From Octopus sinensis (Eukaryota), in NCBI RefSeq assembly GCF_006345805.1, contig NC_043003.1:117476061-117540060 (forward strand): DNA of 64,000 nt. Direction: 5' to 3'. Below, piece after piece: positions 13,481-62,929 of this stretch. Numbering within the stretch: position 1 is the first letter of the stretch; each line of letters begins with the position of its first letter. The notes beneath the pieces were generated by a model. It did no database searches. It was not told the DNA's origin and saw only the letters and a list, made by a program, of their open reading frames with translations. The translations under genes and the position numbers were made by a program.

Positions 13481-14072
13481 CGAGCTGGCAGAAACGTTAG
13501 CACGCCGGGCGAAATGCTTAGCAGTGTTTCGTCTGCCGCTATGTTCTAAGTTCAAATTCCACCGAGGTCGATTTTGCCTTTCATCCTTTCGGGATCGAGA
13601 ATTAAGTACCAGTTACGCACTGGGGTCGATATAATCGACTTAATCCGTTTGTCTGTCCTTGTTTGTCCTCTCTGTGTTTAGCCCCTTGTGGTAGTAAAGA
13701 AATAGGTATTTCGTTTGTCTTTACGTCCTGAGTTCAAATTCCGCCGAGGTCGACTTTGCCTTTCATCCTTTCGGGGTTGATAAAATAAATACCAGTTACG
13801 CACTGGGGTGGATATAATCCACTTAATCCGTTTGTCTGTCCTTGTTTGTTCTCTCTGTGTTTAGCCCCTTGTGGGTAGTAAAGAAATAGGTATTTCGTCT
13901 GCCGTTACGTTCTGAGTTCAAATTCCACCGAGGTCGACTTTGCCTTTCATCCTTTCGGGATCGAGAATTAAGTACCAGTTACGCACTGGGGTCGATATAA
14001 TCGACTTGATCCGTTTGTCTGTCCTTGTTTGTCCTCTCTGTGTTTGGCCCCTTCTGGGTAGTAAAGAAATGG
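13481..14072 (+). mobile_element. Family C SINE trimer (one head, three ~183-bp bodies)
   Basis: Body repeated three times with junction aaagaaatag|gtatttcgt. Confidence 0.92.
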
Positions 14073-14740
14073 GTATTAACTTTCGTAAGCATACTGTTGA
14101 CTTTATCGTCACTAGAGACAACCTTTGAATGAGGACTGCCAGGGTATATTAACAGGACAATGACAATTTGAGCTGGATCTTCATTGTGGCTGTAGCAGCT
14201 GCATACTCCATAGCGTATGTGAGGCTGGTTGATAAATAGTTTTGCTAGTTTTAGTGTTAGCGGTTTGATAGACATTATCGTAAGCAGCCGTGAATCTGTT
14301 CATTCACTAATTTAGTCTCAGTATCTCATACACTGAACTTAAAAGATAAACGTCATCTGCAATCAAAAACCTACACACAGTGCCTTCCTTCTATTACGTT
14401 TCGATTCACAGGAGCCTGCTATCAAAACCATTAGATATGGTGGGGCCATCTTCTATGTTCTGCAACACAACGCTTAGTTAAGATTTTTCCCTTCTTTCAA
14501 ACTGATTTACGTAGCAGTTCCCCGGCGATTCCCAGCAGAGTGAATTTAGCGAACTAGTCAACTGTAGACATGTAACTGCCAGCACTAGTGTTCACACATA
14601 GCTTCGTATAAAATAAACAGAATAAGTGTTATTACTAACAGCTGAAAGACGAATGAGAAAACAGTTGTGTATATTTTATATAAATTTGGCGGCAGTGTTT
14701 GTGTGTGTGTGTGTGTACATGTAGGTTGTTGTGTATTATA

Positions 14741-18099: not shown

Positions 18100-18486
18100 G
18101 GAGGCGCAATGGCCCAGTGGTTAGGGCAGCGGACTCGCGGTCGGAGGATCGCGGTTTCGATTCCCAGACCGGGCGTTGTGTGTGTTTATTGAGCGAAAAC
18201 ACCTAAAAGCTCCACGAGGCTCCTGCAGGGGGTGGTGGCGACCCCTGTTGTACTCTTTCGCCGCAACTTTCTCTCACTCCACTCTTACTTCCTGTTTCTG
18301 TTCTACCTGTATTTCAAGGGGCCGGCCTTGTCACTCTCTGTGTCACGCTGAATATCCCTGAGAACTACCTTAAGGGTGCACGTGTCTGTGGAGTGCTCAG
18401 CCACTTACACGTTAATTTCACGAGCAGGCTGTTCCGTTGATCGGATCAACCGGAACCCTCATCGTCGTAACCGACAGAGTGCTTCC
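18100..18486 (+). mobile_element. Family B SINE (tRNA-Arg(TCG)-like head) with 12-bp TSD
   Basis: Head TGGCCCAGTGG (A box), GACTCGCGGTC (TCG anticodon arm), GGTTTCGATTCC (B box); TSD ATTGTAAGTTAA at 18088-18099 and 18487-18498. May correspond to a published Octopus OR-type SINE (not verified). Confidence 0.92.
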
Positions 18487-18974
18487 ATTGTAAGTTAAAA
18501 TTACCTTTCAGAGTTGAATCAAATATTTACCTGCCAGGTGTGGCGTCGATTGAATAGAACACACCATATCGCTACAAACAAAGTCTTAATTTTGCACCAA
18601 ATTGATGTTATTTCTAAAATACAGATCAGTCTTTACAGAGCAACCCAATCCCTAAAGTTATTCTCGTCATGACGAGCCCATGCTACAGCAACCTTTCTAA
18701 TGTGTTCTTTCTTTCTTGAAGAGAATGGGGTAGAAGATAAATAAAATTTCGCCGTTATTTTAAGCAGTTCGACATAATGTCTCGCTCAGTGCCTCATGGG
18801 TGCACAGATCGATCGTATTATGAGACTGAATACTTTGAAAAATTTTCAGTTCCAAATATCTCTAATCGGATTTCAAATCCAACTGAAGTAGCTCTGGTCT
18901 TTCAACAACAGAGTGACGGGAAGCTATAGCAGCTGAATGTTCTGCACAGTAATTATATATGCTTCATTTAAAAG

Positions 18975-21734: not shown

Positions 21735-21847
21735 CGCGAGAGCGAGCGCTACTAATGAATGTATCCCAAAAGGCACAAATCGAAATATCTCAATTCAGAT
21801 ATTGTTATTAAATGTAATCGATAGAGTGCACAATAATACAATAAATA

Positions 21848-22250
21848 AGGCGGCGAGCTGGCAGAATCGTTAGCACGCCGGGCGAAATGCTTAGCGGTAT
21901 TTAGTCTACCGTTACGTTCTGAGTTCAAATTCCGCCGAGGTCGACTTTGCCTTTCATCCTTTTGGGGTCGATAAATTAAGCACCAGTTACGCACTGGGGT
22001 CGATGTAATCGACTTAATACTTATGTATGTCCTTGTTTGTCCTCTCTGTGCTTATCCCCTTGTGGGTAATAAAGAAATAGGTATTTCGTCTGTCTTTACG
22101 TTCTGAGTTCAAATTCTGTCGAGGTCCACTTTGCCTTTCATCCTTTCGCGGTCGATAGATTAAGCACCAGTTTCGTACTGTGGTTGATCTAATCAACTGG
22201 CCTCCTCCTCTAAAAATTTTGGGCCTTGTGCCTAGAGTAGAATAGAATAT
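21848..22250 (+). mobile_element. Family C SINE dimer
   Basis: Full unit, then aaagaaatag|gtatttcgtc junction and a second body with the alternative tail (ggcctcctcc...gggccttgtgcctagagtagaa). Confidence 0.88.
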
Positions 22251-23003: not shown

Positions 23004-23296
23004 ATGTATATATAATATATATATATATATATATGTTCTACCCTACTGATCATATTATGTATATTTGTAGTGACTTTACGTAAGTAAATTTCCTTTCGAC
23101 TAAATCATATACCCCCTAGAAACTACAAAATCATACAATAACCCCTGTTACATTGCAAACCTCATCAGTCCGAAAACTCCTAACTGCCCTCGCTACACCC
23201 ACACCTACTTCCTCCTCTTTTCGGGTTCAATTTTTCTCTTCCCCACCTCGAATTTTAATCCCCTGTCTCTTTAAATGTAGGTTATATGTATTTCTT

Positions 23297-23668
23297 GTGG
23301 AGGCGCAATGGTTAGGGCAGCGGACTCGCGGTCGTAGGATCGCGGTTTCGATTCCCAGACCGGGCGTTGTGAGTGTTTATTGAGCGAAAACATCTAAAGC
23401 TCCACGAGCTCCGGCAGGGATGGTGGTGATCCCTGCTGTACTCTTTCACCACAACTTCTCTCACTCTTACTTCCTGTTTCTGTTGTACCTGTATTTCAAA
23501 GGGCCGCCTTGTCACTCTCTGTGTCACGCTGAATATACCCGAGAACTACGTTAAGGGTACACGTGTCTGTGGAGTGCTCAGCCACTTACACGTTAATTTC
23601 ACGAGCAGGCTGTTCCGTTGATCGGATCAACCGGAACCCTCATCGTCGTAACCGACGGAGTGCTTCCA
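23297..23668 (+). mobile_element. Family B SINE with 14-bp TSD (source of the 3' transduction)
   Basis: TSD TATATGTATTTCTT at 23283-23296 and 23669-23682; ~8-bp deletion in the A box. Confidence 0.92.
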
Positions 23669-36685: not shown

Positions 36686-38532
36686 ACAGATTATATCGAC
36701 CCCAGTGCTAAACTGGTATTATGTTATCAACACTTGTACTCAAATGGCCCTTATTATATCGACCCCCAAAAGAATGAAAGGCAAAGTTAACCTCGGTGGC
36801 ATAAGGTTATATGACACTCATGCCTTTCTCAGTCGAGAATTGAAATCGCTTTGCTTGTATACAAGACTTGTTCTTAATAAATCAGCTTATCCTAGAAGTG
36901 AGCCTCCCCTCCACACACGCAAAAGGAAAACCTTATTAACACCTTATCTATTTATGAAAATATTTTTTTAATGAAATATCTTTCTGAAAAATTATTGTGT
37001 ACTCGTAAATATAATAAAAAGTAAATGTCACTGCACATGCGCAGAAGCAAAACGATATTTATTTTAAATATTACATTAAAGGCAGAAATAAGAAATTTTA
37101 TGAAAATTGCCTGTGTAGAGATAATATGCCAATATGGAATTTTTGATACAACCAAATATAAGACGATTTATTTATTTATTGGATCAAATTTATTCATGGC
37201 TTAAATGTAAATATTGAAATTTGATATTCGGGTTTTAGCCCAATATCTACATATGTTAGCTGGAAAGCTTCAACAGGTAAATACAGGGGGGAAATTTCGT
37301 TGTTATTTTATATTTTGTTTTTATTCATATATGAAATTATGAAATTATGAAATTTTCTGCGCTCTTTCTTTTTCCTTTATTTTTCTCCCTTTTTTCTTTT
37401 TTTTTTTTTTTGTCTTTTTTTGGCTTGCTTTTCACAGCTTCTATAGCGAGAAAGAAAATACAAATTATTGGCTATTTTACCGTTTATATTGAAGAAAACT
37501 TACATTGATACAAACACGCCAATATAACTTCCATAAATATTGATTCCTTTTCACTGGTCATATGACGAGTTTGTTTTTGTCTTTTGTTTTGTTTTTTTCT
37601 GGGAAAAGCGTAAATTTATTGGACACGGTGCAGGAAGTTCTTTTATCCATCTCGAGAGTGAAATAAAAATCAAAGTCGATTTAAAGGTAGATTTGAACTC
37701 AGCACATTGACTTTTGCTTGTTCAACCATCCATTCTACATTCCTCAGCTTGTTATGTGAAGTTTCTATTTGGTCGCTCAACCAGCTAGAAAGAGCAACCA
37801 AATTTCCTTCTTAATGAGAGATGCGTTGGATAATGTAACCTTCGTTCCCTGACTGGGGAAAATGGGAGGATCATGAATATGGTGCCATTGGCCAAAAATT
37901 TCCTCGAGTTGATCTGAGGATATGCGACAAATCCTCGATAGAGAAATGAAACGCAAGATTTAAGAATTGGACTCAGTAAAATATGCAAGACAAACACTTT
38001 AATCCAACATTTCACTAGTTATACAAACAAAATTACGACTCCCATACATTAGCTTCGGCTCATAGACGATTAGTAATTTCAAGGGAGACGGGATGAGTCG
38101 ATTACATCAGCCCCAGTGTTTCACTGGTACTTACTTTATCGACCCCGAAAGGAAGAAAGGCAAAGTTGACCATGGCTGAATTTTCAGTTAATTTTGCATG
38201 GACTTATATAACCTCTCTATAATTTCTACAATTTTTGCTTTTATGATCTACCATTTTGCTTCATGTATTAATTTCTCTAGTATCTAAACGACCGTAACTA
38301 ATTAATAAGCATAATGCTGCTACCGTTATTCTTTTGATCGTTTGTTTCTTTTTCTATTCTTCTTGTCGAGAAGAATATTTTCTCTCTGTATGTACAGTGG
38401 TTGGGCTTTGTGGTGTTAAAAGACACTAAATTAGCATGTCCCCTGTTAAAAGGTATTTTCTAGGTCGCTGCCATTGCAGGCAGAGGAGATTTGACAGGCG
38501 ATATCTAAGTTGCATGTAGCTATGTGTTCAGA

Positions 38533-39928: not shown

Positions 39929-40385
39929 TAGGCGCAGGAGTGGCTGTGTATAGGCGCAGGAGTGGCTGTGTATAGGCGCAGGAGTGGCTGTGTGGTAAGT
40001 AGCTTGCTAACCAACTACATGGTTCCGGGTTCAGTCCCACTGCGTGGCATCTTGGGCAAGTGTCTTCTGCTATAGCCCCGGGCCGACCAATGCCTTGTGA
40101 GTGGATTTGGTAGACGGAAACTGAAAGAAGCCTGTCGTATATATGTATGTATATATATATATGTATTTGTGTGTGTTTGTGTGTCTGTGTTGTCCCCCTA
40201 GCATTACTTGACAGCCGATGCTGGTGTGTTTACGTCCCCGTCACTTAGCGGTTCGGCAAAAGAGACCGAGAGAATAAGTACTGGGCTTACAAAGAATAAG
40301 TCCCGGGGTCGATTTGCTCGACTAAAGGCGGTGCTCCAGCATGGCCGCAGTCAAATGACTGAAACAAGTAAAAGAGTAAAAGAGT
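39929..40385 (+). mobile_element. Family A SINE with triplicated 5' 22-mer
   Basis: taggcgcaggagtggctgtgta repeated twice before the normal head; full body and tail. Confidence 0.93.
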
Positions 40386-40642
40386 AAATTATAGAAAGAT
40401 TATATAAGTCCATGCAAAATTAACTGAAAATTCAGCCATGGTCAACGTTGCCTTTGTTCCTTTCGGGGGTCGATAAAGTAAGTACCAGTGAAACACTGGG
40501 GTTGATGTAATCGACTCATCCCCCCTCCCTTGAAATTACTGACCTTGTGTCAAACTTTGAAACTAATATTAAATGAAAATACAATAACACACATCATCAC
40601 GACTGTCAACAATGTGATACAATGAATATATGCAGATATACT

Positions 40643-51916: not shown

Positions 51917-52258
51917 TATCATCATCATCCTCATCATCATCATCATTATCATCATCATTATTATTATTATTATTATTATTGGCATAATGACCCACCCAAG
52001 ACGCAAGATTTGTTACAACGAATCTTACAAACGAAAACCGAAGTATTTAAGCAATTATTGATGAATAAATTAAGGACGTAAATCCCACCATATTCTGTGT
52101 GGGCTTTTGATGATTTTGCTATTGTTTGATACTGTTATTTATTGCTAACATAGCATATCATTTGGCAAAGTCACTCATAGTCTTCAGGTAGCATTTCATC
52201 TCACATATTGAAATAAATCAAAACTTTCTCATAAGCCCAGGAAAGAAGTTCCTAAAAT

Positions 52259-52844
52259 GTGGGGTGGTGTGGAAGCACTCCGTCGGTTACTACGACGAGG
52301 GTTCCGGTTGATCCGATGGATATCGTATAACCATCTCGCATAGACTTAAGTAACTGAAAAATCTATTTAAGAACAAGAAAAGTAACAATTTATAAGGGAT
52401 AAGAGGCTGAAAAGTAAGGATATCAAAATAAGAAAACGAAATAATAAGAAATATATATATGGAAGCACTCCGTCAGTTACGACGACGAGGGTTCCGGTTG
52501 ATCCGATCAACGGAACAGCCTGCTCGTGAAATTAACGTGTAAGTGGCTGAGCACTCAACAGACACGTGTACCCTTAACGTAGTTCTCGGGGATATTCAGC
52601 GTGACACAGAGAGTGACAAGGCCGGCCCCTTGAAATACAGGTACAACAGAAACAGGAAGTAAGAGTGAGAGAAAGTTGTGGTGAAAGATTACAGCAGGGA
52701 TCACCACCATCCCCTGCCGGAGCCTCGTGGAGCTTTTAGGTGTTTTCGCTCAATAAACACTCACAACACCCGGTCTGGGAATCGAAACCGCGATCCTACA
52801 ACCGCGAGTCCGCTGCCCTAACCACTGGGCCATTGCGCCTCCAC
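52259..52844 (-). mobile_element. Composite insertion: full family B SINE, 145-bp transduced flank and duplicated SINE 3' end, inside a 12-bp TSD
   Basis: TSD AGTTCCTAAAAT at 52247-52258 and 52845-52856; 52316-52460 is the reverse complement of 23669-23812. Confidence 0.92.
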
Positions 52845-53603
52845 AGTTCCTAAAATAGTATCGAAGAAGAGTTAACCATTAATAACTCGGCCCTTTCTAC
52901 TGAATGACGGCATCTATAAATCGTAGCTGCAAAGAGTAAGAGAAATTCTTCAATTCAACCGAGAATTAAATCTGTGTCACTGACTCAGATAGTCCAAAGA
53001 TTTCCGCCATTCTGCAATGTCCCTACATTGGAATTTCCGTTTTTTATATATCCATCGAATGCTATGAGACACACACAGCCGTTGACATCCAATTTTGTGG
53101 CACTGATTGTCTGTATTGTGTATCCTACGGAAGCTACTTCCTGGCTCGACGCCAAATTCTTCATTCTTCGCTTAAATCCTCTCTTCCCCGCGGTCAGGTC
53201 AGGTCTGATGTATGCAGCATCGTGTCCTACTACTGGTAAACTGTAAACCAGTACAACCTGTGTCAGTGGGGTAGAAAGGGCTCCTTAGCCGTAGTGAAGG
53301 CAATCTATCTAGGGAGATAACCTTACAATAAATCACTCGGTCCGTAGCTTAGAAATACTGGGTTGAGGTCCAGTGGGAACAGCTTTGTTTCATGGAGGAG
53401 GAAAGATCTTCTTTAGTACTTGGTTGTACAATGCTTTCCAATGTGTGTAGTAGTGGCGCGCGCACACATTATTAGCCATTTGAAAAGACTATGGAATTTA
53501 CAATTAACTGCACCAGGGTTCCTCTTCCCCAGGGAACCAGACCTAATGGTATACCTGTGGATATAGGTCCAGCCCCTACTTTGCTGGGTCCTGTCTCTGA
53601 TCA

Positions 53604-54245: not shown

Positions 54246-54352
54246 GGCTATTATTATGTTGCTAAAATCCAACGTAATCCAAATTCCGTATAATCCAATA
54301 GTTAAGCTGTTCTATTAGTGTGGTAAATAATTTATTTATATTTATATAATTT

Positions 54353-54461
54353 ATATCACGTTGAAAGCACCGGATCTCGTCCGATCACCGAAGTTAAGCA
54401 ACATAGAACCTAGTTAGTATTTAGATGGGTGACCGCTTGGGAAACCTAGGTGCTGTAAGCA
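54353..54461 (+). pseudogene. 5S: 5'-truncated 5S rRNA copy (lacks ~10 nt)
   Basis: ATATCACGTTGAAAGCACCGGATCTCGTCCGATCACCGAAGTTAAGCAAC...TTAGTATTTAGATGGGTGACCGCTTGGGAAACCTAGGTGCTGTAAGCA: A and C boxes recognisable; ACCTAG/CTAGGT helix intact; TTTT follows at 54467-54470. Confidence 0.9.
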
Positions 54462-54470
54462 TTACCTTTT

Positions 54471-54593
54471 AGACCGATAGAATAAGTACTAGGCTTACAA
54501 AGAATAAGTCCTGGGGTCGATTTGCTCGACTAAAGGTGGTGCTCCAGCATGGCCACAGTCAAATGACTGAAACAAGTAAAAGAGTAAAAGAGT
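54471..54593 (+). mobile_element. Family A SINE 3' end fused to the 5S copy
   Basis: agaccgatagaataagtactaggc...gtaaaagagtaaaagagt, essentially the family consensus tail. Confidence 0.9.
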
Positions 54594-54779
54594 ATCAGGA
54601 ACAAAGCAAATGAAACGAAAAAAAAGCAAAAGACAGGTGAAAAATACTATCCAAGTTAGTATTTGTTTTTACGATGTAAAGAAGAAATAAGAGAGAGTTC
54701 ATTCGATGTTTCGAACAATCGTCCTTTGACGAGTGAATGAGAGGAAAACTTTTCACAAGAGAACAAAAATTGTGAATTT

Positions 54780-62200: not shown

Positions 62201-62235
<35 letters not shown>

Positions 62236-62238
<3 letters not shown>

Positions 62239-62645
62239 CGCAGGAGTGGCTGTGTGGTAAGTAGCTTGCTTACCAACCACATGGTTCCGGGTTCAGTCCC
62301 ACTGCGTGGCACCTTGGGCAGGTGTCTTATACTATAGCCTCGGGCCGACCAAAGCCTTGTGTCTGGATTTGGTAGTCGGAAACTGAAAGAAACCCGTCGT
62401 ATATATGTACGTATATGTATGTATATGTGTGTATATGTTTGTGTGTCTGTGTTTGTTACCCCAACATCGCTTGACAACCGATGCTGGTGTGTTTACGACC
62501 ACGTAATCGAGCGGTTTGGCAACAGAGACCGATAGAATACGAACTAAGCTTACAAAGAATAAATCCTGGGGTCGATTTGCTCGACTAAAGGCGGCGATCC
62601 AGCATGGGCACAGTCAAATGACTAAAACAAGTAAAAGAATAAAAG
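62236..62645 (+). mobile_element. Family A SINE, full length
   Basis: Follows (TA)n; complete head and tail. Confidence 0.9.
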
Positions 62646-62929
62646 AACATGTGTGTGTGTGTGTAACATATGGTATTATTATGAAAAGGGAAAATTTTTT
62701 TGCCATTTCGCTGCTGACTGAAAAAAAATGGTTGATCAACCTTAATCGATTTTCGATCCTTATTGGGTTCTTATCAGAACCCAATATAATAGATGTGCAA
62801 TATAATTGGGTGTCTTTTCAATACATTGTCTGGTTTTAAAAGCCACATCAAACGTTATGGTGGATCTTAGGTGTAAGTACATGAGGATGGTCAGTCTCTG
62901 CATAAGGAGTAGACAACCACCACATATAT

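What the first reader, a model, noticed from the sequence alone, without database searches (positions are those of the whole stretch)
52247..52856. Daughter insertion: SINE, transduced flank and a second SINE 3' end inside one TSD
A 12-bp TSD (AGTTCCTAAAAT) brackets a full family B SINE, 145 bp of the 23.7-kb flank, then a repeat of the SINE's last ~48 nt (joined at an AT microhomology) and a short CAC/CCC tail. The unit was therefore inserted in one event. A model (inference): reverse transcription primed on a normal SINE 3' end, as a tail-recognising LINE RT would need, then switched template onto a read-through RNA. The flank contains several T4-T5 runs that should stop Pol III, so the origin of the read-through RNA is a puzzle. 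This is a route by which tail-dependent SINEs could move unique DNA locally.
Basis: partly seen in the sequence, partly recalled or inferred. Interest (0 to 1): 0.82.

Follow-up and report, generated by a model that had tools for sequence, protein, structure and literature searches.

The report
Octopus SINE carrying a neighbour's flank
A short mobile element in an octopus genome carries 144 bases of unique DNA copied from beside a sister element 29 kb away; this looks like a mobile element moving host DNA, but it is at least as well explained by ordinary break repair that copied from the nearby sister.

Summary
One exact 12-bp direct repeat (AGTTCCTAAAAT) brackets four parts on the minus strand. 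These are a full 385-nt SINE, 144 bp identical (3 differences) to the DNA just 3' of the SINE at 23.3 kb, a second copy of the SINE's last 48 nt joined at an AT overlap, and 11 extra bases. The copied DNA includes the 23-kb element's own 3' target-site duplication, so copying ran from 23 kb to 52 kb. Homology stops exactly at the SINE 5' end.

The one-event retrotransposition model is not required and has three problems:
- The source has lost its A box and carries five more private deletions that the daughter lacks, all upstream of the junction.
- The flank holds three T4 runs and one T5 run.
- Source and daughter lie 29 kb apart in a genome of gigabase size.

I favour a two-step DNA route (about 0.5). 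An ordinary SINE insertion was later broken and repaired by one-sided invasion of the nearby SINE. Synthesis ran past the homology and was rejoined by microhomology. Chimeric reverse transcription stays alive (about 0.3). An allele or orthologue with a plain SINE at the 52-kb site would decide. No other octopus DNA could be reached.

The parts
52845..52856 (-). Target-site duplication, copy at the 5' end of the element (AGTTCCTAAAAT on +)
   Evidence: Exact 12-mer present only twice in the window, at the two boundaries
52460..52844 (-). Full-length family-B SINE (385 nt). It has an A box (TGGCCCAGTGG) and a B-box-like GGTTTCGATTCC, and ends ...GACGGAGTGCTTCCA
   Evidence: BLAST and alignment to the copies at 23.3 kb and 18.1 kb; A/B-box pattern
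52491..52516 (-). 26-nt near-palindrome GTTCCGTTGATCGGATCAACCGGAAC inside the SINE. Its loop (CGG) is the point that corresponds to the junction
   Evidence: Predicted hairpin. The same 26-mer is intact in all three full copies
52316..52459 (-). Copy of the unique DNA that lies 3' of the 23-kb SINE (matches 23669-23812). It includes that SINE's 3' TSD copy and has 3 substitutions
52270..52317 (-). Second copy of SINE nt 338-385, joined to the flank copy through a 2-nt AT overlap (52316-52317)
   Evidence: BLAST 46/48; the 15-mer of the SINE end occurs here
52259..52269 (-). Eleven extra bases, CACCACCCCAC, between the SINE end and the TSD. They are absent from the other two copies and their origin is unknown
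   Evidence: unique in the window
52247..52258 (-). [quoted passage not shown]
23297..23668 (+). Donor-locus SINE. It carries an 8-bp A-box deletion, five 1-bp deletions and 3 private substitutions
23283..23296 (+). Donor SINE's 5' TSD copy, TATATGTATTTCTT
   Evidence: read directly
23669..23812 (+). Donor flank that was copied. Its first 14 nt are the donor SINE's 3' TSD copy. It contains T4 runs at about +33, +42 and +97 and a T5 run at about +118
18100..18487 (+). Third, older family-B copy with TSD (A)TTGTAAGTTAA. It ends at TTCCA with no tail and serves as the reference for a normal insertion

Best explanation
I propose two ordinary events rather than one unusual one.

Step 1 (inferred). 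A normal family-B SINE retrotransposed into the 52.5-kb site. This made the 12-bp TSD and left 11 odd bases at its 3' junction.

Step 2 (inferred). Later the resident SINE suffered a break, or a stalled fork, at or upstream of nt 337/338, which is the loop of a 26-nt palindrome.
- The left end, carrying SINE sense-strand sequence, invaded the homologous SINE 29 kb away at 23.3 kb. That copy is in inverted orientation, which does not matter for strand invasion.
- DNA synthesis copied the rest of that SINE and ran 144 bp past the end of homology into its unique flank.
- The new strand was then released and joined to the other broken end at a 2-nt AT microhomology.

The other end still carried SINE nt 338-385, so those 48 nt now appear twice.

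The result is SINE, donor flank and SINE tail inside the original TSD. This is one-sided invasion (SDSA, or long-tract gene conversion) finished by end joining. A replicative template switch (MMBIR/FoSTeS type) would give the same product.

Shown by the sequence: the anatomy, the direction of copying, the microhomology junction, and the distribution of differences. Inferred: the order of events and the DNA nature of the intermediate.
For: 1. All structural facts are met. These are the outer TSD, homology starting at SINE nt 1, donor flank contiguous with the SINE end including the donor's own TSD copy, the AT junction, and the 48-nt overlap.

2. Differences between the two loci. The 12 substitutions are spread evenly: 7 in 337 nt upstream of the junction point and 5 in 190 nt downstream. 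All six indels are deletions private to the 23-kb SINE and lie in nt 1-225, the part this model says was never copied.
- If they arose after a one-event copy and were uniformly placed, P is about 1e-3.
- Six indels against no more than 6 substitutions on that lineage is itself improbable (P about 4e-5 to 0.02).
- The daughter SINE body matches the consensus at every one of these sites.

3. The donor lacks an A box, so as it stands it cannot be a Pol III source. A DNA donor needs no promoter and no read-through of three T4 runs and one T5 run (PMC3141230).

4. The donor is 29 kb away on the same molecule. Nearby homologous copies are preferred repair templates (established knowledge of ectopic recombination). 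Random retrotransposition would land this close with a probability of roughly 2e-5 in a genome of about 2-3 Gb (genome size from my own knowledge of octopus genomes).

5. The junction falls on the loop of a conserved 26-nt palindrome. This is a plausible site for breakage or polymerase stalling, but it is weak evidence.

6. A systematic search found no Alu 3' transduction among 118,489 AluY elements (bioRxiv 10.1101/2024.04.29.591526). The RNA alternative therefore has a low prior for Pol III SINEs.
Against: - No intermediate (a plain SINE at the 52-kb site) has been seen, and no other octopus sequence could be retrieved.
- Substitution divergence is the same upstream (2.1%) and downstream (2.6%) of the junction. 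This is what a single copying event predicts. The two-step model then needs both SINEs to have been young and of the same subfamily when the repair happened.
- Daughter and donor share T at alignment column 170 (GGTGA, against GGCGA in the other copies). This could be a shared private variant. It is a CpG transition, so it could equally be parallel or a subfamily trait.
- The five 1-bp deletions sit in homopolymer runs. They might be assembly or polishing errors inside a repeat, which would remove argument 2.
- The proximity argument is weakened by ascertainment.
- The 11 extra bases hint that the TPRT event at this site was itself unusual.
Confidence: 0.5

Rival explanations
1. This is the first reader's model: one retrotransposition event with a chimeric cDNA. 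Target-primed reverse transcription started on the 3' end of a SINE RNA and copied 48 nt, after 11 unexplained nt. The enzyme then switched template at an AT microhomology onto an RNA from the 23-kb locus that began at SINE nt 1 and extended at least 144 nt into the flank. It copied that RNA to its 5' end.
For: - There is one TSD around the whole unit, and the homology begins exactly at the SINE's first base, as for a Pol III transcript.
- The architecture matches known template-switch chimeric retrocopies: a 5'-truncated element at the 3' end, another RNA copied to its 5' end, and no TSD between the parts. LINE RT template switching is the usual explanation for SINE module exchange (PMC4758252).
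- Substitution divergence is uniform, about 2.2% over all 527 nt.
- The T at column 170 is shared.
- This SINE has no internal T4 run, so every Pol III transcript must run into its flank (read).
- The 11 extra 3' bases suggest an irregular TPRT event.
Against: - The source has no A box and carries five more deletions that are absent from the daughter, all upstream of the junction. All six must then be later events (P about 1e-3).
- The flank starts with a dense T-rich stretch and holds three T4 runs and one T5 run. T4 and T5 stop nearly all human Pol III transcription in vitro.
- The copied stretch ends where there is no terminator or poly(A) signal.
- The 29-kb distance to the source is unexplained, unless template switching favours nascent RNAs that are physically nearby.
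- No Alu transductions were found in primates.
- The tail piece with its 11 extra nt cannot come from the same RNA as the flank, so two RNAs are needed.
Confidence: 0.3
2. Retrotransposition of a single read-through RNA from a locus not in this assembly. This would be an allele or paralogue of the 23-kb locus in which a 5'-truncated 48-nt SINE had already inserted 144 bp downstream. That truncated SINE's tail would have served as the recognition site for the reverse transcriptase.
For: It needs no template switch. 5'-truncated insertions joined by microhomology are ordinary. It would also explain why the daughter SINE lacks the deletions of the copy seen at 23 kb.
Against: No such truncated SINE lies at 23813 in this assembly, and the window holds no third copy of the flank. 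The model still needs read-through of the T runs and does not explain the proximity. It adds an unseen locus.
Confidence: 0.07
3. Assembly artefact: a chimeric join through the repeated SINE placed the 23-kb flank inside the 52-kb SINE.
For: SINE repeats are classic places for misjoins. The 1-bp homopolymer deletions in the 23-kb copy hint at imperfect polishing.
Against: - The two flank copies differ at 3 of 144 positions, and the two tail copies in the composite differ at 2 of 48. The copies therefore diverged as separate loci.
- The return junction is a 2-nt microhomology in unique sequence, not a repeat-mediated join.
- The TSD is intact.
Confidence: 0.04

Closest known systems
One-sided invasion / SDSA completed by end joining (coupled homologous and non-homologous repair; long-tract gene conversion), and the related replicative MMBIR/FoSTeS template switch
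   Same: A broken end invades a homologous sequence elsewhere, synthesis runs beyond the homology into donor-specific DNA, and the end is rejoined without homology or with 1-3 nt of microhomology. This produces a templated insertion and leaves the donor unchanged. The concepts and primary references are listed in PMC4888836 (Belmaaza & Chartrand 1994 on one-sided invasion; Richardson et al. 1998 on long-tract conversion; the MMBIR section).
   Different: Those cases are mostly induced breaks in reporter constructs. This would be a natural germ-line case between two dispersed SINEs 29 kb apart, preserved with every junction readable. Nothing here shows directly that the intermediate was DNA.
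Non-allelic gene conversion between dispersed SINEs (Alu-Alu conversion)
   Same: One SINE copy is partly overwritten from another copy.
   Different: Classical Alu conversion tracts stay inside the element. Here the tract left the element and imported 144 bp of unique DNA.
3' transduction by L1 and SVA
   Same: An element followed by unique DNA that maps directly downstream of a source element, all inside one TSD (background in PMC13141329).
   Different: - L1 and SVA are Pol II transcripts that read past a weak poly(A) signal and are primed on a new poly(A) tail.
- This is an A/B-box (Pol III-type) SINE without an A tail.
- The transduced piece ends in a partial SINE, not a poly(A) tail.
- The apparent source has no A box.
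- A dedicated search found no transduction by Alu.
Template-switch chimeric retrocopies (U6-L1 and similar chimeras; Buzdin et al. 2003, cited in PMC4758252; PMC4476161 listed)
   Same: A 5'-truncated retroelement at the 3' end is fused to a copy of a second RNA that reaches its own 5' end. One TSD surrounds both, and the internal junction is often microhomologous.
   Different: In those chimeras the second RNA is an abundant small RNA or mRNA. Here it would be a rare read-through transcript of one particular, now promoter-less SINE that happens to lie 29 kb away.

Membership tests
SINE inserted by target-primed reverse transcription (Pol III-type head) | Internal A box and B box near the 5' end | tested here: met
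   TGGCCCAGTGG, then 33 nt, then GTTTCGATTCC in the 52-kb, 18-kb and 22.7-kb copies. The 23-kb copy has lost the A box.
SINE inserted by target-primed reverse transcription (Pol III-type head) | Head recognisable as a tRNA (or other small RNA) gene | tested here: not met
   ARAGORN finds no tRNA in the window. Rfam gives no match at E<=1 over 52240-52860. The tRNA origin is therefore inferred from the boxes only.
SINE inserted by target-primed reverse transcription (Pol III-type head) | Dispersed copies with the same ends, each flanked by its own TSD | tested here: met
   Three full copies have TSDs of 12, 14 and 11-12 bp. Two of them end at exactly TTCCA.
SINE inserted by target-primed reverse transcription (Pol III-type head) | Partner LINE sharing the 3' tail (the 'tail-recognising' premise) | tested here: inconclusive
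   The window holds no other sequence with this tail and no LINE ORF. RTE-clade LINEs are reported active in octopus (PMC9115989), but their tails were not compared.
3' transduction (retrotransposition of a read-through transcript) | Extra DNA maps immediately downstream of a source element, and the unit lies inside one TSD | tested here: met
   The daughter even carries the source's 3' TSD copy.
3' transduction (retrotransposition of a read-through transcript) | The source can be transcribed from its own promoter through the transduced DNA | tested here: not met
   The A box is deleted in the 23-kb copy, and the path holds three T4 runs and one T5 run. The state at the time of the event is unknown.
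3' transduction (retrotransposition of a read-through transcript) | The daughter element body descends from that source (shares its private variants) | tested here: inconclusive
   None of the source's 9 private changes in the SINE is in the daughter. The only shared non-consensus state is one CpG transition. Two other shared states are also in an O. bimaculoides copy.
Template-switch chimeric retrocopy | 5'-truncated element at the 3' end plus a second sequence copied to its 5' end, with a microhomology junction and a single TSD | tested here: met
Template-switch chimeric retrocopy | The second template was RNA | not testable with these tools
   There is no intron, poly(A) or other RNA mark in the 5' part. 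Transcript data from the 23-kb locus would be needed.
Ectopic repair by one-sided invasion and end joining | Homology between recipient and donor on one side only, donor DNA contiguous with it, and a non-homologous or microhomologous return junction | tested here: met
   337 nt of SINE homology, then 48 + 144 nt of donor sequence, then the AT junction.
Ectopic repair by one-sided invasion and end joining | The recipient keeps its own variants upstream of the break | tested here: inconclusive
   All six donor-private indels lie upstream and are absent from the recipient (P about 1e-3 under the rival model). Substitution divergence, however, is no higher upstream.
Ectopic repair by one-sided invasion and end joining | A pre-repair state exists (a plain SINE at the same site) | not testable with these tools
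   No other octopus assembly or reads could be reached.

The most novel reading that the evidence does not exclude
A tail-dependent, Pol III-type SINE moved 144 bp of unique host DNA in a single retrotransposition event. Reverse transcription began on a normal SINE 3' end and then jumped onto a read-through RNA from a SINE 29 kb away, possibly a nascent one held nearby in the nucleus. This would be a first clear 3' transduction by a non-poly(A) SINE, and a hint that template switching samples local RNAs.
Probability: 0.3. Interest if true: 0.7.

Novelty: new member of a known kind. Interest (0 to 1): 0.4.

Why it matters
Whether SINEs can carry host DNA is an open point. L1 and SVA do so, and a systematic search found no case for Alu. 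A structure like this one would be counted as SINE transduction by any TSD-based pipeline.

This locus shows that the hallmark 'element + source flank inside one TSD' is not enough. The same picture arises when a resident SINE is repaired from a neighbouring copy.

If the repair reading is right, this is a very readable natural example of dispersed repeats serving as landing pads that copy unique DNA between nearby sites. If the RNA reading is right, it is a new route for moving sequence in SINE-rich cephalopod genomes. In either case the locus offers a simple presence, absence or intermediate-state test.

Tried and rejected
1. Fetching more copies or orthologous loci. All attempts came back empty:
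- Protein search with the 113-aa ORF spanning the SINE end and flank at 23.5 kb found no hits.
- Exact-pattern scans for the SINE tail and head in metagenome, prokaryote-genome and viral collections found 0 hits.
- The SINE consensus ORF hit only one UniRef protein of Octopus bimaculoides, A0A0L8H1P9 (84% identity over 64% of the 67-aa query). Its contig is not on record.

The hit names the host genus, but the species of the window is not determined. It also showed that two variants shared by daughter and source are family-level.

2. tRNA identity of the head. ARAGORN and Rfam were both negative.

3. Partner LINE. The window has no LINE-like ORF and no other carrier of the tail.

4. Origin of the 11 extra bases. 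They are unique in the window. A weak resemblance to the reverse complement of an internal SINE segment was dismissed as chance.

5. Segmental duplication. Rejected, because homology stops at SINE nt 1 and at flank nt 144.

6. Reverse direction (52 kb to 23 kb). Rejected, because the 23-kb SINE has both copies of its TSD in place and the 52-kb unit has only the 3' one.

7. Intramolecular jump on one read-through RNA. Disfavoured, because the 11 nt after the tail do not match the 23-kb flank.

8. Structure-based support for a recognition hairpin at the SINE 3' end. The fold is not better than shuffled sequence (z = -1.2), so no claim is made.

Full report
**What is there**

The window is repeat-rich, AT-rich animal DNA. 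The only protein-level relative of the SINE's longest ORF is an uncharacterised protein of Octopus bimaculoides (sequence). The host is therefore an octopus, species not determined.

Family B has three full copies in the window, at 18100-18487 (+), 23297-23668 (+) and 52844-52460 (-). There is also an element at 22706-~22990 that shares only the first ~196 nt. Intact copies carry an A box and a B-box-like motif at tRNA-gene spacing. Neither ARAGORN nor Rfam recognises a tRNA.

The 18-kb and 23-kb copies end at exactly ...GAGTGCTTCCA and are followed directly by their TSDs, (A)TTGTAAGTTAA and TATATGTATTTCTT. So normal insertions have no A tail or repeat tail. This fits an enzyme that recognises the 3' end, although no partner LINE is in the window.

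**Checking the observation**

Read on the minus strand, 52856..52247 contains, in order:
- TSD
- full SINE (385 nt)
- 144 nt matching 23669-23812 (3 substitutions)
- SINE nt 338-385 again, overlapping the flank copy by AT
- CACCACCCCAC
- TSD

The 12-mer TSD is exact and occurs nowhere else in the window. Homology to the 23-kb locus begins at the first SINE base and ends at flank nt 144. Nothing else around the two loci is similar, so this is not a segmental duplication.

The copied flank begins with the 23-kb element's own 3' TSD copy, while the 5' TSD copy stays only at 23 kb. The 23-kb type of locus is therefore the donor.

The two flank copies differ at 3 positions and the two tail copies at 2. 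These are diverged loci, not an assembler's duplication.

**Why the single TSD does not prove a single event**

A resident SINE whose interior is later altered keeps its TSD, its 5' end and its 3' end. Suppose the resident SINE broke near nt 337/338 and the left end invaded the SINE at 23 kb. Synthesis would then copy SINE nt 338-385 and continue into that locus's flank. Release and end joining to the right-hand end, which still starts at about nt 338, gives exactly what is seen: SINE 1-385, donor flank, then SINE 338-385. This includes the 2-nt microhomology.

Such one-sided invasion with a non-homologous finish, and long-tract conversion, are established outcomes of break repair (PMC4888836). 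Both non-allelic recombination and RT template switching are already invoked for SINE module exchange (PMC4758252).

**Evidence that separates the models**

(a) Indels. Daughter and donor differ by 12 substitutions, spread evenly: 7 in 337 nt upstream of the junction point and 5 in 190 nt downstream (Fisher p = 0.76).
- All six indels are deletions private to the 23-kb SINE and lie in nt 1-225: the 8-bp A-box deletion and five 1-bp deletions.
- At each of these sites the daughter agrees with the 18-kb copy and, at all but one of the sites where it can be aligned, with the family-A element.
- If the daughter were an RNA copy of this SINE, all six would have to be later events on one lineage and in one part of it. 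P is about 1e-3 if uniform. Six indels against at most 6 substitutions has P between about 4e-5 and 0.02, depending on the assumed indel rate.
- Under the repair model this part of the daughter never came from the 23-kb copy.
- Caveat: the 1-bp deletions are in homopolymers and could be consensus errors.

(b) Promoter and terminators. The 23-kb copy has no A box today. Its flank opens with ATTTCTTATTATTTCGTTTTGTTATTTTG and contains three T4 runs and one T5 run. In human assays T4 and T5 stop almost all Pol III, and even T-poor variants terminate (PMC3141230). The copied stretch ends at a place with no terminator or poly(A) signal.

(c) Proximity. Donor and recipient are 29 kb apart. Random reinsertion would do this with a probability near 2e-5 in a 2-3 Gb genome (size from my own knowledge). 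Repair favours nearby homologous templates.

(d) Shared variants. Three states shared by daughter and donor against the 18-kb and family-A copies looked like private markers. Two of them (ATG and CAC CAC in the ORF) are also in the O. bimaculoides copy. Only one CpG transition remains. This is weak support for the RNA model.

(e) Junction position. The junction corresponds to the loop of a 26-nt near-palindrome that is identical in all three copies. This could mark a break or stall site in DNA, or a stop for a reverse transcriptase. I do not count it for either side.

(f) Prior. A search of 118,489 AluY elements found no transduction.

**Verdict on mechanism**

I put the two-step DNA route at about 0.5. 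The rest is unassigned.

The equal substitution divergence on both sides of the junction is the best point for a single copying event. The indel pattern, the missing promoter, the terminators and the distance are the points against it.

The 11 extra bases at the 3' junction are unexplained under every model. They could be untemplated additions, or a few bases of read-through from the master copy that supplied the resident or tail RNA.

**Comparison with known systems**

The structure looks like L1/SVA 3' transduction and like template-switch chimeric retrocopies. It passes their structural criteria but fails or leaves open the criteria about the source (see the membership table). It matches the structural criteria of ectopic one-sided repair, but the pre-repair state cannot be shown here.

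Under the favoured reading it is a natural, unusually legible member of a known class of repair products. Under the rival reading it would be a new variant of transduction, for a Pol III-type SINE without a poly(A) tail.

**Limits**

Only three family copies were available, and no second assembly, reads or transcripts. All attempts to reach further octopus sequence failed. The decisive test is the state of the 52.5-kb site in relatives.

Noticed in passing
window 54342-54594 (+): A full-length 5S rRNA match (79.6 bits) is followed after 9 nt by the last ~120 nt of the window's most abundant ~410-bp SINE family. It looks like a 5S-headed SINE that shares its tail with another SINE family, that is, a head swap.
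   Followed up: partly
window 38072-38360 (+) versus 40540-39791 (-): A ~290-bp unit, made of part of the ~200-bp repeat family plus ~135 bp of unique DNA, is present twice in inverted orientation about 1.5 kb apart. The 40-kb copy is interrupted by a ~455-bp SINE at TCTATAA|TTTCTACAA, so the 38-kb copy serves as its empty site. This is a second local, inverted copy of 'repeat plus unique flank' in the same window.
   Followed up: partly
window 22706-~22990 (+): This element shares family-B nt 1-196 (about 86%) but lacks 11 nt of it and has an unrelated 3' half. It is evidence of module exchange between SINE families. It lies only ~300 bp upstream of the donor SINE, in the same orientation.
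   Followed up: no
window 2655-3135 and about 15 further copies (e.g. 34323-34739, 39971-40388, 62233-62646): The abundant ~410-480-bp SINE family contains a segment (…CACTTGCCCAAGATGCCACGCAGTGGGACTGAACCCGGAAC…, seen) that resembles the CORE domain. Octopus OR2 is described as a CORE-SINE (PMC4758252). The resemblance is judged by eye only.
   Followed up: no
window 13481-14077, 31720-32318, 21847-22198, 33596-33971: A ~183-bp unit occurs in short tandem arrays and as inverted pairs at many places. It is either a satellite-like or a MITE-like family.
   Followed up: no
window 28.8-29.7 kb, 43.0-45.1 kb, 0.5-1.8 kb, 51.9-52.0 kb: There are kilobase-scale microsatellites (GAT/GGT-type, CATA/CATG-type, ATC-type) with extreme strand skew.
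   Followed up: no
window 52491-52516 (-), 23612-23637, 18431-18456: A 26-nt near-palindrome in the SINE 3' region is perfectly conserved in all three copies, although they are 4-8% diverged overall. It may be the recognition hairpin for the partner reverse transcriptase. The fold energy of the 3' region is not significant against shuffles.
   Followed up: partly
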